IMG/VR virus record: IMGVR_UViG_3300017917_002374
Location: 124,001 to 188,000 of that record
Length of the DNA: 64,000 nucleotides
Reading direction: 5' to 3' (one strand)
Shown here piece after piece: positions 25,878 to 49,341 of this stretch. Each line of letters starts with the position of its first letter. The first letter of the stretch is position 1. Position numbers and translations under genes: made by a program. The notes beneath the pieces were generated by a model, which saw nothing but the letters and a program-made list of their open reading frames with translations, was not told the DNA's origin and did not search any database.

Positions 25878-25950
25878 ACACTTTGGATGAACAGATAAAT
25901 CTGACTCCGAATCAGACAGACTCCTGGTTGACAACAGCCCCCCAGAGTGT
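25878..25950 (+). ncRNA. tRNA-like element with Arg(CCG) anticodon stem-loop
   Basis: 9-bp closing stem ACACTTTGG/CCAGAGTGT and TCTGA-CTCCGAA-TCAGA. D and T arms degenerate, no CCA. Confidence 0.45.
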
Positions 25951-25968
25951 TACACTAAATAGAGTTTT

Positions 25969-26050
25969 GCCCATGTGGTGGAATGGTAGACACGCTAGTC
26001 TTAGGAACTAGTGCGAGAGCGTGGGGGTTCGAGTCCCTCCATGGGCACCA
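25969..26050 (+). tRNA. tRNA-Leu(TAG)
   Basis: CTAGT-CTTAGGA-ACTAG, long variable arm, GTTCGA, CCA. Confidence 0.95.
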
Positions 26051-26062
26051 TTAAATACGTGT

Positions 26063-26308
26063 ATGAAAGAACTGCTTAAAAATCTGCCTCAGATTCTAGG
26101 TGCCTTGCCTGAGATAGTAAAGTACCTCAAGTACATTCCTATTCTTATGGTACTAGGTGGATTAGGTTATCTAGCATATTTTTACATGCAAAATCACAAA
26201 GATCCATATGTGTGTGTTAACAATCAGGTATTTGAACAGTTACGAGTGGATAGCGATATCTATATTTTCAAAGGTGAAACCTGTGTTGATGCAAAAGATT
26301 TGAAATAA
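26063..26308 (+). CDS. Small membrane protein within tRNA array
   Basis: ATG 5 nt after TAAATA; one TM helix. Confidence 0.65.
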   Translation: MKELLKNLPQILGALPEIVKYLKYIPILMVLGGLGYLAYFYMQNHKDPYVCVNNQVFEQLRVDSDIYIFKGETCVDAKDLK

Positions 26309-26310
26309 TT

Positions 26311-26386
26311 GGGGGTATAGCTCAGCTGGGAGAGCGGCGGCTTTGCAAGCCGTAGGTCGCAGGTTCGATCCCTGTTACCTCCACCA
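26311..26386 (+). tRNA. tRNA-Ala(TGC)
   Basis: Loop TTTGCAA, G3:U70, CCA. Confidence 0.95.
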
Positions 26387-26393
26387 AATAAAT

Positions 26394-26470
26394 CCGAGTG
26401 TAGCGCAGCCTGGTAGCGCATCTGCTTTGGGAGCAGAGGGTCGGGAGTTCGAACCTCTCCACTCGGACCA
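26394..26470 (+). tRNA. tRNA-Pro(TGG)
   Basis: TCTGC-TTTGGGA-GCAGA, CCA. Confidence 0.95.
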
Positions 26471-26477
26471 ATTCTAT

Positions 26478-26553
26478 TGGGGATTCGCCAAGTTGGTAAG
26501 GCATCGGATTTTGATTCCGACATTCGGTGGTTCGAGTCCATCATCCCCAGCCA
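26478..26553 (+). tRNA. tRNA-Gln(TTG)
   Basis: TCGGA-TTTTGAT-TCCGA, CCA. Confidence 0.95.
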
Positions 26554-26554
26554 T

Positions 26555-26631
26555 GCGACCGTAGCTCAGTTGGATAGAGTACTGGCTTGCGAAGTCAGTG
26601 GTCGGAGGTTCGAGTCCTTCCGGTCGCACCA
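26555..26631 (+). tRNA. tRNA-Arg(GCG)
   Basis: CTGGC-TTGCGAA-GTCAG, CCA. Confidence 0.93.
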
Positions 26632-26647
26632 GTTCAAGGAGATAACC

Positions 26648-26824
26648 ATGAAACCTATTACATTTGAAAATCGTGTAAGTCACGAGCGTGTGATCTGTGA
26701 TGACGTGCGGCAGGTTCAGACCATTGACGGCGTTGAGTTTCTACAGGTTAGACGTCAGAATGAGCAACGACATTTTTTAATGCGCAAAGACAGTTTGCAA
26801 AAAATTGTTGATAAAAAGAAATAA
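26648..26824 (+). CDS. Small hypothetical protein within tRNA array
   Basis: AAGGAG RBS; MKPITFENRV. Confidence 0.7.
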   Translation: MKPITFENRVSHERVICDDVRQVQTIDGVEFLQVRRQNEQRHFLMRKDSLQKIVDKKK

Positions 26825-26828
26825 CAGT

Positions 26829-26905
26829 GGTGTTGGTAGCTCAATTGGTAGAGTTCTGGATTGTGATTCCAGTGGTTGCGGGTTCAAGCCCCGTCCATCA
26901 CCCCA
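26829..26905 (+). tRNA. tRNA-His(GTG)
   Basis: CTGGA-TTGTGAT-TCCAG, G-1:C73, CCA. Confidence 0.93.
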
Positions 26906-26907
26906 AA

Positions 26908-26983
26908 GCCAACTTAGCTGATGTGGTCATAGCGGCGGTCTGAAGAACCGTGGAAAGACGTTCGATTCGTCTAGTTGGCACCA
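26908..26983 (+). tRNA. tRNA-Phe(GAA)
   Basis: GCGGT-CTGAAGA-ACCGT, CCA. Confidence 0.93.
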
Positions 26984-26984
26984 A

Positions 26985-27431
26985 TTAACCTTTGAATTCG
27001 CGCCAGGCGTTACAACAGCCGCGAGCATCAACTTTAGTATCTAGTTTGAAATCTTTGGGCAGCTTTTTGTTTAGGTCATCAAACAATGAACAGATCTTGG
27101 TGTCTGCGCCAAAGTACAAACAGTTTTCGCAACGCACTTGTCCTAGTACATAACCAGATGCTTTGGGATCAACTGGTCTTTCAATGAACTCTTGATCGTC
27201 CTTGGGCTCACCGTTGATATAGAGTGCGCAGCTGGCATTAGCCACAACCTTGAAGCTCTTAGGGTAAATGTTACAGCGTTCTTTTCCTGGCATAAAATGC
27301 AAACAGGTACCACATTGTGCATGTTGAGTCACACCAGGTGGCGGATCCATGTACAAAAATGCATCACGAGCAACTTTAGGTCCACTGTCCTTGGCTTCAG
27401 TGACAATTTGAATAAAATCTTTAAGATCCAT
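26985..27431 (-). CDS. Cys-rich protein with tandem HiPIP-like repeats
   Basis: Two CxxCxxF..C..[YF]..V.A..C repeats; ATG 4 nt after TAAATA on minus strand. Confidence 0.6.
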   Translation of the reverse strand: MDLKDFIQIVTEAKDSGPKVARDAFLYMDPPPGVTQHAQCGTCLHFMPGKERCNIYPKSFKVVANASCALYINGEPKDDQEFIERPVDPKASGYVLGQVRCENCLYFGADTKICSLFDDLNKKLPKDFKLDTKVDARGCCNAWREFKG

Positions 27432-27444
27432 ACAGTATTTAGCT

Positions 27445-27518
27445 GCTCTCATAGTATAAAGGCATTACACTACATTGGTAATGTAGAAACTCTGGATCGT
27501 TACCAGATGAGAGCACCA
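27445..27518 (+). tRNA. tRNA-Thr(GGT)
   Basis: CTACA-TTGGTAA-TGTAG; T-loop ATCGTTA; CCA. Confidence 0.9.
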
Positions 27519-27520
27519 AT

Positions 27521-27594
27521 GCCCCTGTAGCTCAAAGGTAGAGCAATCGATTGATAATCGATAGACGTTGGATCGTTACCATCCGGGGGTACCA
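27521..27594 (+). tRNA. tRNA-Ile(GAT)
   Basis: ATCGA-TTGATAA-TCGAT; T-loop ATCGTTA; CCA. Confidence 0.9.
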
Positions 27595-27599
27595 AAAAC

Positions 27600-27675
27600 G
27601 GTAATGTAGCATAGTGGCCAATGCACCTCCTTCATACGGAGACTATCGCTGGTTCGAGTCCAGCCATTACCACCA
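27600..27675 (+). tRNA. tRNA-Met(CAT) (Ile2 identity not excluded)
   Basis: CTCC-TTCATAC-GGAG, CCA. Confidence 0.88.
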
Positions 27676-27677
27676 AA

Positions 27678-27754
27678 CGGCCCTTAGCTCAACTGGATAG
27701 AGTTCTGCGCTTCGAACGCAGCGGTTGTGGGTTCAAATCCTGCAGGGCCGGCCA
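27678..27754 (+). tRNA. tRNA-Arg(TCG)
   Basis: CTGCG-CTTCGAA-CGCAG, CCA. Confidence 0.93.
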
Positions 27755-27762
27755 AAGAATAC

Positions 27763-27850
27763 GGAAGTGTGCCAGAGTGGTTTAATGGAGCAGTCTTGAA
27801 AACTGTCGTACTGAAAGGTACCGTGGGTTCGAATCCTACCACTTCCGCCA
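27763..27850 (+). tRNA. tRNA-Ser(TGA)
   Basis: GCAGT-CTTGAAA-ACTGT, long variable arm, CCA. Confidence 0.95.
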
Positions 27851-27880
27851 GTATTAGCAAAATAGCAACAAAATAGGCGG

Positions 27881-27909
27881 TTGACCATTATTCAATCATT
27901 TGCTACACT
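27881..27909 (+). promoter_or_regulatory. sigma70 promoter inside tRNA array
   Basis: TTGACC-N17-TACACT just before tRNA-Asn. Confidence 0.75.
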
Positions 27910-27927
27910 ATTGAAAGTTAGAAACAT

Positions 27928-28003
27928 TGTCTCGTAGCTCAGTTGGTAGAGCAGGTGACTGTTAATCACCCTGTCGCTGGTTCGATCCCAGCCGAGACAG
28001 CCA
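27928..28003 (+). tRNA. tRNA-Asn(GTT)
   Basis: GGTGA-CTGTTAA-TCACC, CCA. Confidence 0.95.
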
Positions 28004-28009
28004 GTTTTT

Positions 28010-28084
28010 GCACCCATCATCTAGTGGTTAGGATATCGCCCTTTCACGGCGAGTACACCGGTTCGAATCCGGTTGGGTGTACCA
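28010..28084 (+). tRNA. tRNA-Glu(TTC)
   Basis: TCGCC-CTTTCAC-GGCGA, CCA. Confidence 0.95.
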
Positions 28085-28094
28085 GTTTAAAGTT

Positions 28095-28180
28095 GGGGAT
28101 GTGTGCCGAGCGGCGAAGGCAGCTGACTGTAAATCAGTGACAGAGAAACACCGTAGGTTCGATTCCTACCGTCCCCACCA
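28095..28180 (+). tRNA. tRNA-Tyr(GTA)
   Basis: CTGA-CTGTAAA-TCAG, variable arm, CCA. Confidence 0.93.
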
Positions 28181-28182
28181 AG

Positions 28183-28762
28183 TTCCGGTTACCACTTTCC
28201 TGAAAGTGGCGTATGGTAAACGAGAAAACCCAGGTGGCTATGGCACCTTTAGCGAAACATAGACTCTGCATTACGATGTGGTGTCTCCGGTGTTTCAGAC
28301 GACATAGCAGCGTGGACACTACGCGGCACAGTCCTTTTAGTGTTCGGACAGGGTAACAACTCCAGCTTGGGGGCGACCGTGGAAAAGCGTGGCCCAAGCA
28401 TAAAGGCAAGTGCTATAGATGACAACTGGGTATCGTGTGTGGACGCACACACTATGCGGGCACTCCCGGCCGGGGACGGGTCCTGATATAACCAACAGCG
28501 GCTTTGACACACTTAGCGGTGGACGTCTAAATTGGTACTATAGCACTTACCTTTATGTCAAGACGTGGGGGCGCCACCCCCTACTCTGGTCCGGAGGATG
28601 AGAAGACCGTGGTAGGTCAGGACCTTACTGTTTGGTGCAAACAGCGTTGGCAATACGAGAATCCTCTCTGGTCGGGGAGCGGGTGGGGGCATGCGTGATG
28701 TGGGCAGTGCAAAGACTGTTCACTGATGTGCTATAATAACCGCCGCAGAGAGGAAGCACCTA
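28183..28762 (+). ncRNA. Large structured ncRNA, GOLLD/ROOL-like candidate
   Basis: GC-rich, about 580 nt between tRNA-Tyr and tRNA-Asp. 20-nt long-range helix 28399-28418/28538-28557 with one mismatch, many hairpins, ends pair via CGGTTA/TAACCG. Confidence 0.65.
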
Positions 28763-28766
28763 TTCA

Positions 28767-28841
28767 GGTCTCAAAGTGTTCATGGACGCACGCCAGCCTG
28801 TCACGTTGGAAGAAGGGGATCGTTACCCCTTGGGACCGCCA
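28767..28841 (+). tRNA. tRNA-Asp(GTC)
   Basis: CCAGC-CTGTCAC-GTTGG; T-loop ATCGTTA; CCA. Confidence 0.92.
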
Positions 28842-28858
28842 GATAAATTGAGAAGACA

Positions 28859-29068
28859 ATGAGTGAATTTAAAGTATATTGGACCTACGGCGGTGAGAGC
28901 CATGGAGAAGCGTTTCAGGACGTGACCCAGGCATTGGATCGCTGCCAACAACTAAGAAACAGTGGTCGTAGATTTGTGACCATGGCCAGTGAAATTGATG
29001 ACATGGTTGGAGAGTTTGGAGTAACAGAAACGGACTCCACTTACAACTGGAAAAAACGGAGAATCTAA
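28859..29068 (+). CDS. Hypothetical protein
   Basis: 69-aa ORF within array. Confidence 0.7.
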   Translation: MSEFKVYWTYGGESHGEAFQDVTQALDRCQQLRNSGRRFVTMASEIDDMVGEFGVTETDSTYNWKKRRI

Positions 29069-29313
29069 TGAGAGATTATACGCCAAAAATTGCCAAGGCA
29101 GATCTTGAGCATGGTGCATACTATGCGGGTCGCTGTCGCAATGCACACGAAGCACGTTGGAACGCCAGCATACAAAAGTTCGTGCATTGGCGTACCAAAT
29201 TCAATCATACTTTTTTAGAAGAAATTTGTCATCCAGAAGACGAACAACAGTTTGATGTGTTTGTGGTTGAAGCAAAATTAGATAGACCAGAACGAGAAAT
29301 TCCATTAAAATAA
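29068..29313 (+). CDS. Hypothetical protein
   Basis: TAATG-coupled; YYAGRCRNA..ARW. Confidence 0.7.
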   Translation: MRDYTPKIAKADLEHGAYYAGRCRNAHEARWNASIQKFVHWRTKFNHTFLEEICHPEDEQQFDVFVVEAKLDRPEREIPLK

Positions 29314-29366
29314 ATTTTTACACAAGGAGAGTCCAAAATGGACAGTGACAAGAGTGACAAACGCCC

Positions 29367-29441
29367 GGGGGTGTAGCTCAGAGGAAGAGCAACTGGCTTT
29401 TAACCAGTAGGCCGAGATATCGTAATTCTCCACCCTCACCA
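29367..29441 (+). tRNA. tRNA-Lys(TTT)
   Basis: ACTGG-CTTTTAA-CCAGT; atypical T-loop ATCGTAA; CCA. Confidence 0.85.
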
Positions 29442-29528
29442 TATGAAAACACATTATAGCGGATTTCGCAAGTATAAGTCGCATTCTAAAGAGTGCCCTT
29501 GAGATTGGATATAGTGTGTTTCCATATG
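29440..29528 (+). ncRNA. Small multibranched RNA between tRNA-Lys and tRNA-Cys
   Basis: 19-nt closing stem CATATGAAAACACATTATA/TATAGTGTGTTTCCATATG with internal hairpins such as GCATTC-TAAA-GAGTGC. Confidence 0.55.
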
Positions 29529-29605
29529 CAACGGTGGCAGAGAGGCCCAATGCAAGGGACTGCAAATCCCTAAAACCGTGAGTTCGAATCTCACCCGTTG
29601 CTCCA
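29528..29605 (+). tRNA. tRNA-Cys(GCA)
   Basis: AGGGA-CTGCAAA-TCCCT, U73, CCA. Confidence 0.93.
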
Positions 29606-29627: not shown

Positions 29628-30095
29628 ATGCCGTGGATAGAAAATGTTGCTGCCACTGATGTGTCTCAGGGTTTTCATCATGCAGCAGGCGATAACAGCA
29701 TGCTGATTCAAATTGCCGATCCTGCAGGTTGGTTCCCCACTCCTAAATATCAGTTCAAAGAAATACACCAGTTTGAATTCTTGGACGCAGAGGACTCAGA
29801 TGGCTTTCCTGAGGAAGCCAAGTGCTCACATGCACAAGCCGCTGAACTGGTTCGCCTGCTTCAGCATGCACTTGACAATCGCATGAATGTGGTTGTACAC
29901 TGTATGGCTGGTATTTGTCGTAGTGGTGCGGTATGCGAAGTTGGTGTGATGTTGGGATTTCAAGATACTGAAAGGTTCCGTCAACCCAATCTGCGTGTGA
30001 AACATCGCATGATGCAGGCACTGGGCTGGTCATACAACGCAGATGAACAGCCAGATCCAGACAGCTGGCGCAATTTTAAATTAGGAAACATATGA
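29628..30095 (+). CDS. Cys-based (PTP/DSP-fold) phosphatase
   Basis: VVVHCMAGICRS CX5R motif. Confidence 0.88.
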   Translation: MPWIENVAATDVSQGFHHAAGDNSMLIQIADPAGWFPTPKYQFKEIHQFEFLDAEDSDGFPEEAKCSHAQAAELVRLLQHALDNRMNVVVHCMAGICRSGAVCEVGVMLGFQDTERFRQPNLRVKHRMMQALGWSYNADEQPDPDSWRNFKLGNI

Positions 30096-36581: not shown

Positions 36582-36606
36582 ACAGTATTACATACAAGGA
36601 GTGACT

Positions 36607-37923
36607 ATGAGCATAGCAGGTACTACCGCAGTTGACACTAAAAAAATTGCCAAAGATATCTTGGATCGCGTGGGCGCAAGCGCAGAAGATGTTGTAGAAC
36701 GCAAGCCGGTGGATCCTGTTGTGGATGCGCAGGTGCGTGAAAAAATTATTACCGCACGTATTGCACTCTTGCTCAAGGCTCCGTTCTTTGGTAATCTAGC
36801 CACTCGCCTTCAGCTTAAGAATGCAGACGACTGGTGTCCTACTGCTGCCACTGACGGACGCAACTTCTATTACAATACTGAATTTGTTCAAAAACTACCC
36901 CCTAAACAATTAGAGTTCTTGGTTGGACACGAGGTACTGCATGCTGTATATGATCATATGGGTCGGCGTGTGGATCGTAAACCCAAGATCTTCAACATTG
37001 CCTGCGACTATGCTGTGAACGCAGACCTAGTGGATCAGCGTGTGGGCGAACGCATTACTGTGGTTCCCATGCTGTATGATACCAAGTATCGCGGCATGAG
37101 CGCAGAAGCTATCTACGACGACCTCATGCAAAATGTAAAAGAAGTCACATTGGATCAGCTGGCACAGATGCTGCTGGACGAACACTTAGATGGCAACGGC
37201 GAAGGTGAAGGCGATAATGACAAAGACGGCAAAGGTCGTCCCAAACTAAGTGAAGCAGAAAAAGCAGCCATTCGCGACGAGATTCGTGAAGCTGTGCTCA
37301 ACGCGGCTCAACAAGCAGGTGCAGGCAACATTCCTGCAGGTGTTAAACGCATGATCAAGGATCTTACCGAGCCTGTGATCAACTGGCGTGAGCTACTGCA
37401 ACAGCAGATTGAGAGCACTATCAAGAGCGACTTTACCTGGATGAAACCCAGCCGCAGAGGGTGGCATATGGATGCAATCATGCCCGGTATGCGACCAGGC
37501 GAACAGATTGATGTGTGCATTGCCATTGACACTTCTGGTTCAATTAGCGAGCGAGATATCAAAGACTTCATGACCGAAATCAAGGGCATCATGGAAGCCT
37601 ACGATGAATACAAGATTCATGTATGGTGTTTTGATACTGAGATCTACAATCCGCAGATCTTTACTAGCGACAATCTTGATGATATTGCTGCATACGAACC
37701 ACAAGGTGGTGGCGGAACCGACTTCATGGCTAACTACGAGTTCATGAAAGAGAACAATATTGAACCTAAAAAGTTTATCATGTTCACAGACGGTATGCCA
37801 TTTGGTGAGTGGGGCGATGAACAGTATTGTGACGCTTGCTGGATCATCAAAGGCAATCCAAACGCAGAACCGCCTTTTGGTGTGTGGGCACATTATGAAG
37901 AAGCTGCAAAGGAGGCAGCATGA
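36607..37923 (+). CDS. Metallopeptidase-vWA domain protein (DUF2201-type)
   Basis: HEVLH zincin motif, NIACDYAVN, MIDAS DTSGS, GGGGTDF, FTDG. Confidence 0.9.
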   Translation: MSIAGTTAVDTKKIAKDILDRVGASAEDVVERKPVDPVVDAQVREKIITARIALLLKAPFFGNLATRLQLKNADDWCPTAATDGRNFYYNTEFVQKLPPKQLEFLVGHEVLHAVYDHMGRRVDRKPKIFNIACDYAVNADLVDQRVGERITVVPMLYDTKYRGMSAEAIYDDLMQNVKEVTLDQLAQMLLDEHLDGNGEGEGDNDKDGKGRPKLSEAEKAAIRDEIREAVLNAAQQAGAGNIPAGVKRMIKDLTEPVINWRELLQQQIESTIKSDFTWMKPSRRGWHMDAIMPGMRPGEQIDVCIAIDTSGSISERDIKDFMTEIKGIMEAYDEYKIHVWCFDTEIYNPQIFTSDNLDDIAAYEPQGGGGTDFMANYEFMKENNIEPKKFIMFTDGMPFGEWGDEQYCDACWIIKGNPNAEPPFGVWAHYEEAAKEAA

Positions 37924-46351: not shown

Positions 46352-47978
46352 ATTGCACGAGCTTGATTGTATATTTTTAAGCTACGACGAACCAAATGCC
46401 GATTACAATTACGCAGATTTACTTTCAAAAGCGCCTTGGGCTAAACGTGTACACGGAGTTAAAGGCAGCGATGCAGCACACAAAGCCTGCGCAGATCTTA
46501 GCGAAACCGAACATTTTATAACCGTTGATGCAGACAATATAGTAGATCCAAAGTTTTTTGACTTATCTTTTGACTTAGATAATTTTGGCACTGGTGTAGA
46601 AAGTCAACTGAGTTGGAGCGGAAGGAACAATATCAACGGCCTTGTTTATGGCAACGGTGGATTAAAATGTTGGACTAGACAGCATGTATGGCGTATGCGT
46701 ACTCATGAACAGGCCGAAGATAATACCAATCAAGTGGATTTTTGCTGGGATCCTTATTATCACCATGTTGAAGGGTGTTTTAGTATAGTATACAACAATG
46801 CCAGTGCTCTTCAGGCATGGAGAGCTGGGTTTCGCGAAGGTGTAAAAATGAGTTTGCTTTCAGGAATAAAATTGTCAAATCCCAAGCATGGCAACTTTAA
46901 AAAACAGCTTCCAAAACAAAATTATCAAAGACTAATGGTTTGGATGACTGTTGGCGAAGATGTTTCATACGGATTATGGGCTATATACGGAGCACGTATG
47001 GGTTGCTATATGACCAATTGCACAGATTGGGATTACACTCAGGTGAGAGATTTTGATTATCTTGATTCATTGTTCAAAGAGCAAGAACTTTTGATAGATA
47101 ATGAACCATTGCTTAGACAAGCATCTGTTCAACTTGGAGAAAAACTTTCTACCCGACTGAATCTTGAATTTGCTAATTTTAACAAACAACAAAGTTCTTT
47201 TTATAAAGAAACCAATGTATATCTTCCTCGCAGTAATCAAGTTATCAACAAATCATTGACTTTTATCACAGATATACAATTGCCTATTTACTACGATGTT
47301 GTTTTTATTAGTAACGGCGAACCTCATGCAGATACAGTTTATCAGCGTTTACTTAACAAGTGCGGAGATAAAATTAAAATACATCGGATTGATAATGTCA
47401 AAGGAATATTTAATGCACACAAGGCCGCAGCTAATATAGCTAATACAGAAATGTTTTTTGTTGTTGATGCTGATGCATGGATTACAGATAATTTTTCATT
47501 TCCTACAGTAAACGAAATCAACGACACTAGATACAATTATATATATTATAGTGTAAATCCTTTGAATCATCTCTGTTATGGACACGGAGGCCTAAAAGTT
47601 TTTCCTAAGCATGTGTTTGACCAACCACTAGATGAATACGTTGATATGACGACCTCAGTTGGACAAGGAATAAAAATTCTTCCAGTTATTAGCAACATAA
47701 CCAAATTTAACACAGATGCATTTAGTACTTGGCGGACTGCATTTAGAGAGTGTGCTAAATTAAGTTCAGGAATCATTGCAGAACAAGTGCATTACGATAC
47801 AAAATATAGATTAGACGTTTGGACCAGTTATGCATCTGGAGATTTTGCAAACGAATGCATTCAAGGAGCAATAGCCGGAAAAACCTATGGCATGGAAAAT
47901 AAAAACAATTTAGAAGCCATGCAACGTATTAATGATTATGAATTTTTAGAAAAATTGTATAAAGAAACAAATGGCTAG
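46335..47978 (+). CDS. Tandem two-domain GT-A-like protein
   Basis: Two homologous halves, each with EP.AD, VKG..AH.A, VDAD, YG.GGLK, WR..FRE..K. Confidence 0.65.
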   Translation: MSNIIKLHELDCIFLSYDEPNADYNYADLLSKAPWAKRVHGVKGSDAAHKACADLSETEHFITVDADNIVDPKFFDLSFDLDNFGTGVESQLSWSGRNNINGLVYGNGGLKCWTRQHVWRMRTHEQAEDNTNQVDFCWDPYYHHVEGCFSIVYNNASALQAWRAGFREGVKMSLLSGIKLSNPKHGNFKKQLPKQNYQRLMVWMTVGEDVSYGLWAIYGARMGCYMTNCTDWDYTQVRDFDYLDSLFKEQELLIDNEPLLRQASVQLGEKLSTRLNLEFANFNKQQSSFYKETNVYLPRSNQVINKSLTFITDIQLPIYYDVVFISNGEPHADTVYQRLLNKCGDKIKIHRIDNVKGIFNAHKAAANIANTEMFFVVDADAWITDNFSFPTVNEINDTRYNYIYYSVNPLNHLCYGHGGLKVFPKHVFDQPLDEYVDMTTSVGQGIKILPVISNITKFNTDAFSTWRTAFRECAKLSSGIIAEQVHYDTKYRLDVWTSYASGDFANECIQGAIAGKTYGMENKNNLEAMQRINDYEFLEKLYKETNG

Positions 47979-49341
47979 CACTGTCAATTTTTACAAATCT
48001 GTCAAGGAAGCATTAGACGCAGTAGGCCCAGGTATGTGTTTGGCCAAATGGTACCAAGTTACTCTGCATCTTGAGAACGGGCATAATCATAGTTGTCATC
48101 ACCCTAAAACTCATAAAACTCCTTTAGAAGAACTAGACAAAACTCCAGATGCTTTGCACAATACAGTTTATAAAAACACAGTTAGAACCATGATGCTAAA
48201 TGGCCAGCGTCCAGATGAATGTAGATATTGTTGGAATATAGAAGACACTGTGACCAATGAATCATTAGTGTCCGATCGTGTGTTAAAGAGCAGTTGGGGT
48301 ATTGAGAAACTGCCAAACATTATAGAACAAACAGTTGCCCTTGGCAACAACAGTCAACCACCACCAAGCCACATGGAAGTCAGCTTTAGTACCACTTGTA
48401 ATTTTGCATGCAGCTATTGTAGTGCAGATGTAAGCAGTAGTTGGATGAAAGAATTACAAGAACACGGCAAGTACCCAACAGAGTACCCTCTAATTTCAAT
48501 TGAACAAATACAGCGTGATGGAAAAATTCCTATATCAGACAGAGAACATAATCCGTACATTGAAGCATTTTGGAAATGGTGGCCTGATCTGTACTCTCAC
48601 TTGCAGGTGATGAGGATTACTGGTGGAGAACCTTTACTAAGTCCGCATACATTTAAAGTTTTTGATTGGATCAAAAACAATCCTCGTCCAGATCTTGGGT
48701 TGGCACTAAACAGTAACATGGGGGTGCCTGCTCTGTTAATTGATAGGTTTATAACTAAAATTAAAGATATTCTGCATAACGATCTAATTAAAGATTTTAC
48801 ACTGTACACTAGTTGTGAGGCACATGGTTCAAACGCAGAGTACATACGTCATGGGATGAAATATCAACAATGGTTAGACAATTGTAGCAGATTTCTTCAA
48901 GAGATACCACAGGCAAAAATTAGTATCATGGTAACTTATAATGCCATGAGTACTGTGTCATTTTTATCATTTTTACAAGACGTAACCAATTTAAAAAGAA
49001 AATTTAAAAATCGTCTTTCTTTAGACATTGTATACATGGCTAATCCAAAATGTATGACTATTGACATTTTATCAAAAGAATTTTTAGTTTATATTGAACA
49101 GCAGATGAAATATATATCAATCATGCATGCTCAAGGACTTTATAATGATTGGGAACTTCATAAAATACGTAGATTACAGGATTATTTTGAATCCAGGCTC
49201 AAGGATCCAATGAAAAATTTAGATGTTTTTAGAAGAGATTTTAAAGTGTTTGTTGATGAACATGACCGACGTAGGGGTACAAATTTTTTGCAAACTTTTC
49301 CACAGATGAAAGAATTTTACACATTATGCAGCAATTCTTAG
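47971..49341 (+). CDS. Radical SAM protein with auxiliary Cys cluster
   Basis: CNFACSYC, ITGGEPLL, extra CLAKW..CHH..CRYC. Confidence 0.88.
   Translation: MASTVNFYKSVKEALDAVGPGMCLAKWYQVTLHLENGHNHSCHHPKTHKTPLEELDKTPDALHNTVYKNTVRTMMLNGQRPDECRYCWNIEDTVTNESLVSDRVLKSSWGIEKLPNIIEQTVALGNNSQPPPSHMEVSFSTTCNFACSYCSADVSSSWMKELQEHGKYPTEYPLISIEQIQRDGKIPISDREHNPYIEAFWKWWPDLYSHLQVMRITGGEPLLSPHTFKVFDWIKNNPRPDLGLALNSNMGVPALLIDRFITKIKDILHNDLIKDFTLYTSCEAHGSNAEYIRHGMKYQQWLDNCSRFLQEIPQAKISIMVTYNAMSTVSFLSFLQDVTNLKRKFKNRLSLDIVYMANPKCMTIDILSKEFLVYIEQQMKYISIMHAQGLYNDWELHKIRRLQDYFESRLKDPMKNLDVFRRDFKVFVDEHDRRRGTNFLQTFPQMKEFYTLCSNS

What the first reader, a model, noticed from the sequence alone, without database searches (positions are those of the whole stretch)
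28183..28762. Roughly 580-nt ornate non-coding RNA between tRNA-Tyr and tRNA-Asp
Seen: GC-rich sequence with no credible RBS-led ORF. 20-nt helix CATAAAGGCAAGTGCTATAG/CTATAGCACTTACCTTTATG (one mismatch), hairpins CCACTTT/AAAGTGG, GTGTGTG-GACG-CACACAC, GGGGG/CCCCC, CTGTTT/AAACAG, end-to-end CGGTTA/TAACCG pairing, and a repeated ACGAGAA motif near both ends. Known: GOLLD and ROOL are large RNAs of unknown function found in phage tRNA clusters. This may be a short GOLLD variant or a new class.
Basis: partly seen in the sequence, partly recalled or inferred. Interest (0 to 1): 0.65.

Follow-up and report, generated by a model that had tools for sequence, protein, structure and literature searches.

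The report
Three tandem phage tRNA-array RNAs
The 586-base gap between two tRNA genes of this uncultured 355-kb freshwater phage holds three separate, intricately folded non-coding RNAs rather than one giant RNA; each belongs to a widespread family that is absent from Rfam, sits inside phage tRNA gene clusters, and has no known job.

Summary
The region is real non-coding structured RNA, but the "one ~580-nt ornate RNA" reading does not hold. It is a head-to-tail tandem of three modules: A (28181-28399), B (28399-28557) and C (28561-28760).

Each module is an independent family with more than 100 members in IMG/VR viral contigs. In other phages each usually sits alone, filling the space between two same-strand tRNA genes.

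Covariation supports the folds:
- C: 93.8% of cells paired, 36 of 46 pairs compensatory, including a kissing loop and a pseudoknot.
- B: 94.2% paired, 29 of 34 compensatory.
- A: partial structure only, 9 of 21 compensatory.

C is single-copy in 13 of 13 large records and occurs without A or B in complete genomes. The order C then B also occurs, whereas A-B-C was seen only here.

Nothing matches Rfam 15 (no GOLLD, no ROOL), T4 rnaC/rnaD, cultured phages or prokaryote genomes. Freshwater metatranscriptome contigs cover A and C, but not B or the neighbouring ORFs.

Most likely these are stable RNAs co-transcribed with the tRNAs and released by tRNA-processing enzymes. Their function is unknown. 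I rate them as new families of a known kind: phage tRNA-island RNAs.

The parts
27881..27909 (+). Promoter-like site (TTGACC, 17-nt spacer, TACACT, with TG) just upstream of tRNA-Asn. It is a candidate start of the transcript carrying tRNA-Asn, Glu, Tyr, modules A-B-C and tRNA-Asp.
   Evidence: Consensus scan only. No + strand terminator-like site lies between it and the end of the array.
28095..28180 (+). tRNA-Tyr (GTA) with encoded CCA. Its 3' end sets the 5' boundary of module A.
   Evidence: ARAGORN; Rfam tRNA 53.7 bits.
28181..28399 (+). Module A, about 219 nt. Features: 5' hairpin 28192-28209; mini-hairpin 28210-28222 with the 7-nt loop AUGGUAA; AGAA 28223-28226; hairpin 28231-28247; the conserved GGACAGGGUAAC box; 3' hairpin 28365-28399.
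   Evidence: CM R3 hit at window 28181-28404, 134.5 bits, E 7e-34. Iterated nhmmer found 18 full-length relatives, mostly starting 2-3 nt after tRNA-Tyr and ending about 10 nt before tRNA-Asp. The partial structure is 93.5% paired against 28-53% in slid controls. The A-box pattern hits at least 119 IMG/VR stretches. Metatranscriptome contigs cover it.
28399..28557 (+). Module B, about 159 nt. A 20-bp closing stem (28399-28418 with 28538-28557) encloses hairpin 28435-28452, hairpin 28459-28484 and a third, variable hairpin, joined by conserved junctions.
   Evidence: CM R2 hit at window 28390-28558, 132.7 bits, E 3e-28. On 19 sequences, 94.2% of cells are paired against 37-43% slid, and 29 of 34 pairs are compensatory. 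MFE z = -4.7. The pattern hits at least 119 IMG/VR stretches.
28561..28760 (+). Module C, about 200 nt. Elements:
- P1 28567-28581.
- P2 hairpin about 28584-28596, whose loop forms a pseudoknot with 28620-28623.
- P3 about 28606-28619, whose loop kisses the P1 loop.
- P4 28628-28644.
- Mini-hairpin 28645-28657 with the invariant loop UGGCAAU, then AGAA 28658-28661.
- P6 28662-28670 with 28746-28754.
- P7 28679-28682 with 28740-28743.
- P5 about 28689-28731.
   Evidence: CM R1 full-length hit, 135.5 bits, E 6e-38, the only one in the 355-kb genome. On 80 sequences, 93.8% of cells are paired against 38-45% slid, and 36 of 46 pairs are compensatory, including the kissing loop and the pseudoknot. 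Metatranscriptome contigs of 159-160 nt lie at 28573-28735.
28767..28841 (+). tRNA-Asp (GTC). RNase P cleavage at its 5' end would set the 3' end of module C (inferred).
   Evidence: ARAGORN; Rfam tRNA 34.5 bits.

Best explanation
The gap holds three independent, compactly folded non-coding RNA genes (A, B, C) lying head to tail within one tRNA operon of a T4-like jumbo phage.

Shown:
- Each module is a separate conserved family with its own covarying fold. C has seven nested helices, a mini-hairpin, a loop-loop kiss and a pseudoknot.
- Each family normally occupies a slot between two same-strand tRNA genes.
- The families move independently between slots and genomes.
- A and C sequences are present in freshwater RNA libraries, while the adjacent ORFs are not.

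Inferred:
- The modules are transcribed with the tRNAs from the array promoters.
- They are released as stable RNAs by the host tRNA-maturation machinery: RNase P at the 5' end of the next tRNA, and endo- plus exonucleolytic 3' processing of the preceding CCA-encoding tRNA. T4 species 1 and 2 RNAs are released this way.
- In this window no tRNA separates the modules. They either stay linked or are cut at the short single-stranded linkers or in B's 20-bp stem (an RNase III-type substrate).

Most likely role (a guess, low confidence): trans-acting RNAs that bind a component of the tRNA or translation system, or of host defence. A and C share a local building block: a hairpin, then a 3-bp stem with a 7-nt loop that reads UGGCA in C and UGGUA in this window's module A, then AGAA. 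This suggests a common partner or a common tertiary motif.
For: Modularity:
- nhmmer splits the 5' 380 nt into two units that hit different places in other contigs. Iterated searches confirm this.
- C fills 194-231-nt inter-tRNA gaps exactly in 24 contigs.
- Across 320 loci every module-tRNA strand comparison agrees (A 2252, B 1820, C 1871).
- Adjacencies within 40 nt are mostly module-tRNA: B>t 95, t>C 78, A>t 60, C>t 50, t>B 45, t>A 43. Module-module junctions are rare and in varied order: C>B 12, A>B 5, B>C 1.
- C is single-copy in 13 of 13 large records. B is in 6 and A in 6 (three of them weak). Complete 172-kb genomes have C only.
- In the close relative L031, a tRNA-Asp lies between A and C.

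Structure.

Not a known family.

Expression: RNA-library contigs from 4 studies cover the tRNAs, A (28107-28366) and C (28573-28735). Depth is zero over B and over ORFs 28863-29478.

Folding energy: the module MFEs sum to -205.7 kcal/mol against -214.4 for the whole.

Operon context: promoter-like sites stand before tRNA-Leu and tRNA-Asn, and there is no internal + strand terminator.

Precedent: T4 carries rnaD and rnaC directly after tRNA-Arg.
Against: - No end mapping was possible. Logan contigs cannot show transcript ends, and RNA libraries may carry DNA.
- B is absent from the RNA contigs, so its expression is unshown.
- In this one genome the three could still be used as a single transcript.
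- All loci were found through patterns taken from the families themselves, and most are short, so co-occurrence counts are biased.
- A's full fold is unresolved. MI is dominated by two clades.
- Function is entirely inferred.
- The UGGNA loop is UUGAUUA in most A members, so a shared tRNA 3'-end contact is not general.
Confidence: 0.72

Rival explanations
1. One large (about 580 nt) ornate RNA, a short GOLLD or ROOL relative or a new large class, in which A, B and C are domains closed by end-to-end pairing.
For: The three are contiguous here, with 0-3-nt linkers and no tRNA between them. The whole-region MFE contains some inter-module pairs worth about 9 kcal/mol. The total length is ROOL-like. 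GOLLD and ROOL also sit near phage tRNA islands (paper 10.1101/2024.12.08.627333).
Against: No Rfam hit even at E <= 10. The modules occur singly, or in the order C then B, elsewhere. The A-B-C tandem was seen in this window only, out of 320 loci. The end-to-end arms belong to module-internal conserved elements. No conserved inter-module complementarity longer than 4-5 nt was found. No RNA contig bridges the modules.
Confidence: 0.07
2. A, B and C are subunits of one multi-RNA machine: separately encoded in most phages and fused here, by 'Rosetta stone' logic.
For: Adjacency without tRNAs recurs (C>B 12 loci, A>B 5). A and C share a local motif. 16 loci hold all three.
Against: Records judged 95-100% complete carry C but no detectable A or B (G010, G011, G012). 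The cross-molecule search for antiparallel covarying runs found only chance-level 4-5-nt runs.
Confidence: 0.07
3. They are cis-acting parts of the tRNA operon rather than trans-acting RNAs. Candidates are processing spacers or insulators that keep neighbouring tRNAs folding correctly, or carriers of an internal promoter. C holds a nearly invariant TATAATTA box about 45 nt before the next gene, which resembles the T4-type late promoter TATAAATA (recalled from own knowledge).
For: They are always on the tRNA strand and abut tRNAs. The TATAAT box is conserved. Downstream partners vary: tRNAs of 8 kinds, or unrelated ORFs.
Against: Conservation reaches well beyond a promoter hexamer and includes covarying pseudoknots and a kissing loop. 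Some members carry TACAAT or a 1-nt deletion in the box. No -35 or TGn element stands at the right spacing (sequence). Most tRNA-tRNA junctions in the same arrays need only 1-10-nt spacers. Stable presence in RNA libraries fits a product rather than a discarded spacer.
Confidence: 0.08
4. One or more modules are self-cleaving ribozymes that cut at their own 5' edge, freeing the 3' CCA end of the upstream tRNA.
For: C and A begin 0-5 nt after the encoded CCA. Their cores are pseudoknotted with invariant junction nucleotides. A PTP/DSP-type phosphatase gene lies in the array.
Against: No match to any ribozyme family in Rfam. C's 5' end is poorly conserved. C also occurs without an upstream tRNA. 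One RNA contig runs uninterrupted from tRNA-Tyr into A (record 4). There is no experimental test.
Confidence: 0.05
5. The region is protein-coding (small ORFs) or consists of degenerate pseudo-tRNAs.
For: ORFs of 47-60 aa exist. GC-rich sequence leaves long stop-free stretches.
Against: The open frames differ in frame and strand between relatives. Substitutions are compensatory in stems. ARAGORN and the Rfam tRNA model find nothing inside 28181-28766. By contrast, a true small gene in another gap of the same array shows a conserved reading frame.
Confidence: 0.01

Closest known systems
GOLLD and ROOL (large ornate RNAs of phages and prophages)
   Same: The genomic niche is the same: phage and prophage tRNA islands (paper 10.1101/2024.12.08.627333). 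They are also elaborately pseudoknotted, have no known protein partner or function, and are supported by covariation.
   Different: There is no sequence or structure match (Rfam 15 at E <= 10). The modules here are 160-220 nt each, not about 580 or more than 800 nt. They are known so far only from uncultured, mostly freshwater viral contigs. Oligomeric cage formation is untested.
Phage T4 species 1 and 2 RNAs (rnaC, rnaD)
   Same: They are two small stable RNAs (139 and 119 nt) in tandem, directly after tRNA-Arg in the tRNA cluster of a T4-type phage. They are co-transcribed with the tRNAs and cut out by tRNA-processing enzymes (own knowledge of the T4 literature). Their function is still unknown. 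This is the best analogue for biogenesis and layout.
   Different: No homology: the three covariance models give only noise on the T4 cluster with filters off (best 9 bits). T4 rnaC ends in a tRNA-like T-arm and acceptor (sequence). No such end is seen in A, B or C.
T-box riboswitch antiterminator bulge (UGGN pairing with the tRNA 3' NCCA) and the RNase P L15 loop
   Same: C has an invariant 7-nt loop starting UGGCA. This window's module A has UGGUA. Both resemble the first five bases of the T-box bulge, UGGNA (recalled from memory). The context is tRNA-rich.
   Different: There is no Rfam T-box or RNase P match. There is no specifier or elbow-binding element and no downstream terminator. The N position does not vary in C. 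Most A members have UUGAUUA instead. This is a lead only.
raiA and manA motif RNAs (about 200 nt or less, pseudoknotted, function unknown; manA forms RNA-only cages)
   Same: Size class, conserved junctions, and kissing-loop or pseudoknot content. manA occurs in cyanophages and assembles through compact RNA-RNA contacts (bioRxiv 10.64898/2026.07.01.735769).
   Different: No model match. manA is a 5' UTR element, whereas these lie in tRNA arrays. Assembly is untested.

Membership tests
GOLLD (Rfam) | Match to the family covariance model (conserved 3' half) | tested here: not met
   cmscan of the window at gathering thresholds, and of 28100-28900 at E <= 10 with lax filters, gave no GOLLD hit. 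A typical C member also gave none.
GOLLD (Rfam) | Single RNA, many members exceeding 800 nt | tested here: not met
   The whole gap is 586 nt and resolves into three independent modules of 160-220 nt.
GOLLD / ROOL | Location in phage or prophage DNA near tRNA islands | tested here: met
   The modules lie inside an 18-tRNA array of a 355-kb phage record. This is a shared niche, not proof of membership.
ROOL (Rfam) | Match to the family covariance model | tested here: not met
   No hit at E <= 10.
ROOL / GOLLD | Homo-oligomeric RNA-only nanocage | not testable with these tools
   This needs cryo-EM or SEC-MALS. Covariation cannot tell whether C's P1-P3 loop-loop pairing is intra- or intermolecular.
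T4 rnaC / rnaD stable RNAs | Sequence or structure homology to T4 species 1 or 2 RNA | tested here: not met
   R1, R2 and R3 run with filters off on T4 70.5-72.7 kb gave only sub-10-bit noise.
T4 rnaC / rnaD stable RNAs | Non-tRNA stable RNA genes abutting tRNA genes on the same strand in the tRNA cluster | tested here: met
   Window layout, T4 layout and family-wide adjacency.
T4 rnaC / rnaD stable RNAs | Accumulate as processed stable RNAs during infection | tested here: inconclusive
   RNA-library contigs cover A and C but not B or the flanking ORFs. Contigs show no ends, and the phage is uncultured.
tRNA / tmRNA / RNase P RNA / T-box / group I or II intron / known ribozymes | Match to the Rfam model or an ARAGORN call within 28181-28766 | tested here: not met
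   The only weak hit (tmRNA_permuted, 19 bits against a gathering score of 47) is anchored on the T-arm of the real tRNA-Tyr.

The most novel reading that the evidence does not exclude
A, B and C are three new classes of RNA-only devices that T4-like and jumbo phages embed in their tRNA operons. Module C, with its invariant T-box-like UGGCA loop, double pseudoknot and loop-loop kiss, would either capture tRNA 3' ends (or another translation or defence component) or self-assemble through an intermolecular kiss into an oligomer, as ROOL, GOLLD and manA do. That would give a small, tractable handle on what phage tRNA-island RNAs do.
Probability: 0.15. Interest if true: 0.85.

Novelty: new variant of a known kind. 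Interest (0 to 1): 0.62.

Why it matters
Phage tRNA clusters have been known for decades to carry extra stable RNAs: T4 species 1 and 2, and later GOLLD and ROOL. Nobody knows what these RNAs do.

This work adds three more families, each with more than 100 members in viral metagenomes. They are compact (160-220 nt) and rich in covarying tertiary contacts. They are embedded so tightly between tRNAs that host tRNA-processing enzymes must define their ends.

Their small size suits SHAPE, cryo-EM and pull-down experiments. Their independent gain, loss and shuffling between tRNA slots gives a natural data set for phylogenetic profiling against phage proteins.

The result also shows that a long "ornate RNA" in a tRNA array may be a string of separate RNA genes.

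Tried and rejected
- Rfam 15 at gathering thresholds and at E <= 10, on the window region and on a typical C member: only the flanking tRNAs and noise.
- blastn of the window region and of typical A, B and C members against 50,697 GenBank phages: no match.
- BLAST of the whole region in five relatives' records: only 14-15-nt chance hits.
- CMs R1-R3 on the four nearest cultured jumbo phages (Phosso, Atu_ph07, Vibrio 2.275.O, CBB): nothing significant. The best E-values were 0.18-0.49.
- CMs on the T4 tRNA cluster with rnaC/rnaD: noise.
- Pattern scan of 185,579 prokaryote genomes for the C core: 0 hits. C is therefore not a common prophage or cellular element at that stringency.
- 'Three-subunit complex' idea: not supported by co-occurrence or by a cross-molecule complementarity search.
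- 'C is a 5' leader of a fixed gene': rejected. Downstream ORFs fall into many unrelated clusters, the largest covering 13 loci, and otherwise tRNAs of 8 kinds follow.
- Coding potential of C: the frames are inconsistent.
- RNAalifold alone gave a poor C structure. The structure was rebuilt from mutual information.
- A full fold of A could not be settled. MI is confounded by two clades, and the pseudoknot region misaligns.
- Literature: the IMG/VR catalogue of 10,006 candidate RNAs (PMC10690425) could contain these motifs, but its tables are not held. No paper describing them was found.
- Another gap of the same array (26051-26310) was tested as a further RNA and turned out to be a small protein gene.

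Full report
**Setting**

The window is bases 124001-188000 of a 354,959-bp IMG/VR virus record with direct terminal repeats, judged complete. Its family B DNA polymerase is closest to Sinorhizobium phage Phosso (50% identity), then Agrobacterium phage Atu_ph07 (47%), then Rak2-like jumbo phages (about 44%). About 2,670 phage records match, mostly T4-type phages.

The window carries an 18-tRNA array on the + strand at 25969-29605. The finding is the 586-nt gap between tRNA-Tyr (ends 28180) and tRNA-Asp (starts 28767). The same DNA is found in pond, freshwater, lake and soil metagenomes from 13 studies.

**Checking the observation**

GC is 0.54-0.55 against roughly 0.39-0.47 in the coding sequence flanking the array.

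Folding energy alone is not persuasive. The whole gap gives -214.4 kcal/mol, z = -2.2. Taken separately, only the middle part stands out: A z = -0.8, B z = -4.7, C z = -0.8. The case therefore rests on comparative data.

**Not a known family**

Rfam 15 (4,227 models) finds only the tRNAs at gathering thresholds. At E <= 10 on 28100-28900 it finds nothing credible. There is no GOLLD, ROOL, raiA, OLE, RNase P, T-box, intron or ribozyme hit. The tmRNA_permuted hit (19 bits against a threshold of 47) merely re-uses the T-arm of tRNA-Tyr. A typical relative of the 3' part also gives nothing.

**The gap falls into three units**

A flanking protein led to related contigs. In one of them, only the last 170 nt or so of the gap aligned, inside a shorter inter-tRNA gap.

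A pattern taken from that alignment hit 100 viral contigs. In 24 of them the element fills, base for base, a 194-231-nt space. It begins right after the encoded CCA of one tRNA and ends 3-11 nt before the next tRNA on the same strand. This is module C (window 28561-28760).

The remaining 380 nt then split cleanly in an nhmmer search:
- Positions 1-222 (module A, 28181-28399) hit one set of places. These typically lie 2-3 nt after tRNA-Tyr and about 10 nt before tRNA-Asp.
- Positions about 213-376 (module B, 28399-28557) hit different places. These typically lie 9 nt after tRNA-Glu or about 14 nt before another tRNA.

**Structures**

Module C. Mutual information on 77 sequences and pair counts on an 80-sequence alignment support this fold:
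- hairpins P1, P2, P3 and P4;
- a 3-bp mini-hairpin with the invariant loop UGGCAAU, followed by AGAA;
- nested long-range helices P6, P7 and P5;
- a 3-bp kiss between the P1 and P3 loops;
- a 4-bp pseudoknot between the P2 loop and the strand after P3.

Overall 93.8% of cells are paired, against 38-45% when partners are slid by 1-3 columns. 36 of 46 pairs show changes on both sides, and 0 of 500 shuffles reach the observed covariation.

Module B. It is a 15-20-bp closing stem around three hairpins with conserved junctions. 94.2% of cells are paired against 37-43% slid, and 29 of 34 pairs are compensatory.

Module A. Five helices are supported: 93.5% paired against 28-53% slid, with 9 of 21 compensatory. 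Two pseudoknot-type contacts are visible by eye and by MI. The full fold is unresolved.

The end-to-end pairing is not. Its 3' arm is part of C's P7 and junction, and its 5' arm is a conserved A element present where no C is nearby.

The repeated ACGAGAA is part of a block shared by this window's modules A and C: a hairpin, then CGU, a 7-nt loop, ACG, then AGAA.

**Independence of the modules**

Covariance models R1 (C), R2 (B) and R3 (A) each hit the window once, full length, at 132-136 bits.

In 13 large records, C is present exactly once in each. B is present in 6. A is present in 6, three of them weakly. Records judged 95-100% complete at 158-173 kb have C alone. In one 349-kb record, C is followed directly by B, the reverse of the order here.

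Across 320 fetched loci:
- All module-tRNA strand comparisons agree: 2252 for A, 1820 for B, 1871 for C.
- Junctions within 40 nt are overwhelmingly module-tRNA.
- Module-module junctions are C>B in 12 loci, A>B in 5, and B>C in 1, which is this window.

A search for conserved antiparallel complementarity between modules in loci holding two of them found only 4-5-nt runs, which is chance level. The module MFEs sum to within 9 kcal/mol of the whole.

The loci were ascertained through the families' own motifs and are short, so the counts are indicative rather than a census.

**Expression**

Only Logan contigs of RNA libraries were available, so ends and levels cannot be read. In four metatranscriptome studies, contigs lie on the tRNAs and on two of the modules:
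- Module A: 28107-28353 with no differences; also 27944-28259 and 28230-28366.
- Module C: 28577-28735 and 28573-28731, with 1-2 differences.

Relatives' A and C sequences were also present, at summed depths of up to several hundred. Depth was zero over B (28401-28554) and over the neighbouring ORFs (28863-29478) in all four runs. That pattern fits abundant stable RNAs better than DNA carry-over, but it does not prove processing.

**Operon context**

Promoter-like sites precede tRNA-Leu (25928-25956) and tRNA-Asn (27881-27909). No + strand terminator-like site lies within the array.

**Coding and pseudo-tRNA alternatives**

Long stop-free stretches in C arise from base composition. They lie in different frames and strands in different members. 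By contrast, the 260-nt gap at 26051-26310 of the same array has a frame conserved in two relatives and encodes an 82-aa protein with a hydrophobic segment.

**Comparison with known systems**

The layout matches phage T4, where rnaD and rnaC (species 2 and 1 RNAs) follow tRNA-Arg with gaps of 1 and 6 nt. The three models find no homology there.

GOLLD and ROOL share the niche, being 'often near tRNA islands', but they share no sequence or structure with these modules.

No member was found in GenBank phages by blastn, in the four nearest cultured jumbo phages by CM, or in 185,579 prokaryote genomes by pattern. No paper describing these families was found. The 2023 IMG/VR catalogue of candidate RNAs may include them, but its tables could not be checked.

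**Mechanism**

What is shown is the anatomy, the modularity and the presence in RNA libraries.

What is inferred is the biogenesis. The modules would be co-transcribed with the tRNAs and released by RNase P and tRNA 3' processing, as for the T4 stable RNAs (own knowledge). In this window the cuts would have to fall at the linkers or in B's long stem.

What is guessed is the role. The invariant single-stranded junctions and tertiary contacts are those of an RNA that binds something specific. The UGGCA/UGGUA loops recall the T-box bulge that pairs with tRNA NCCA ends, but most A members lack the motif. The loop-loop kiss in C could be intermolecular, as in the recently solved RNA cages. I put about 15% on such a tRNA-binding or self-assembling role and regard the function as open.

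**Verdict**

The single-RNA and GOLLD reading is not supported. The region holds three new, widespread families of phage tRNA-array RNAs, which I rate as a new variant of a known kind. Interest is 0.62.

Noticed in passing
window 26051-26310 (+), between tRNA-Leu and tRNA-Ala: This gap encodes a conserved protein of about 82 aa with a hydrophobic, membrane-like segment. The reading frame is preserved in L011 and L090, where the gene also sits between tRNAs. It is a protein gene embedded in the tRNA array, not an RNA.
   Followed up: partly
L017, L020, L042, L043, L064, L069, L090, L104; also the weak R3 hits in G006, G013, G017: A further RNA subfamily of about 200 nt shares module A's 5' start (CCCGUUAC plus a hairpin) and its 3' end (the GGACAGAGUAAC box plus the terminal hairpin), but has a different middle. 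Some contigs carry both forms (two pattern hits in L017, L117, L134, L138).
   Followed up: partly
window 28210-28226 and 28645-28661: This window's modules A and C share a local block: a hairpin, then CGU, a 7-nt loop (AUGGUAA in A, UGGCAAU in C), ACG, then AGAA. It may be a shared tertiary motif or partner site, or a trace of common ancestry. R1 does not detect A.
   Followed up: partly
window 28767-28841: tRNA-Asp scores only 34.5 bits on the Rfam tRNA model and has an unusual T-loop (GGGGAUCGUUACCCC). A similar T-arm appears in relatives' tRNA-Asp (L003).
   Followed up: no
window 29628-30095 (+): A 155-aa ORF just past the last tRNA has weak PTP/DSP-type phosphatase hits (Tc-R-P 28.4 bits, DSPc 26.1 bits). 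It could be an RNA-end or protein phosphatase linked to the tRNA region.
   Followed up: no
L015, L016, L023, L036, L044, L057, L058, L066, L067, L073, L075, L099, L110 (downstream of module C): In 13 contigs, C is followed 18-30 nt later by a homologous ORF of 88-100 aa with a ribosome-binding site. The ORF is rich in acidic EE..E motifs. It was not run against any family library.
   Followed up: partly
G007 (record of L079) 346396-346757: Module C is followed directly by module B, overlapping by about 2 nt in the model hits. This is the reverse of the B-then-C order in the window. The C>B junction recurs in 12 loci.
   Followed up: partly
window 26985-27452 (-) and 28859-29313 (+): A 155-aa ORF on the opposite strand, with a faint cysteine-rich zinc-finger hit, lies in a 461-nt array gap. 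Two small ORFs of 69 and 81 aa with no family hits lie between tRNA-Asp and tRNA-Lys. The latter stretch is partly conserved in L014.
   Followed up: no
window 36601-37923 (+) and 47971-49341 (+): An HNH endonuclease (phrog_1314, E 2e-112) and a radical-SAM-domain protein (phrog_14086, E 2.5e-10) lie downstream of the array.
   Followed up: no
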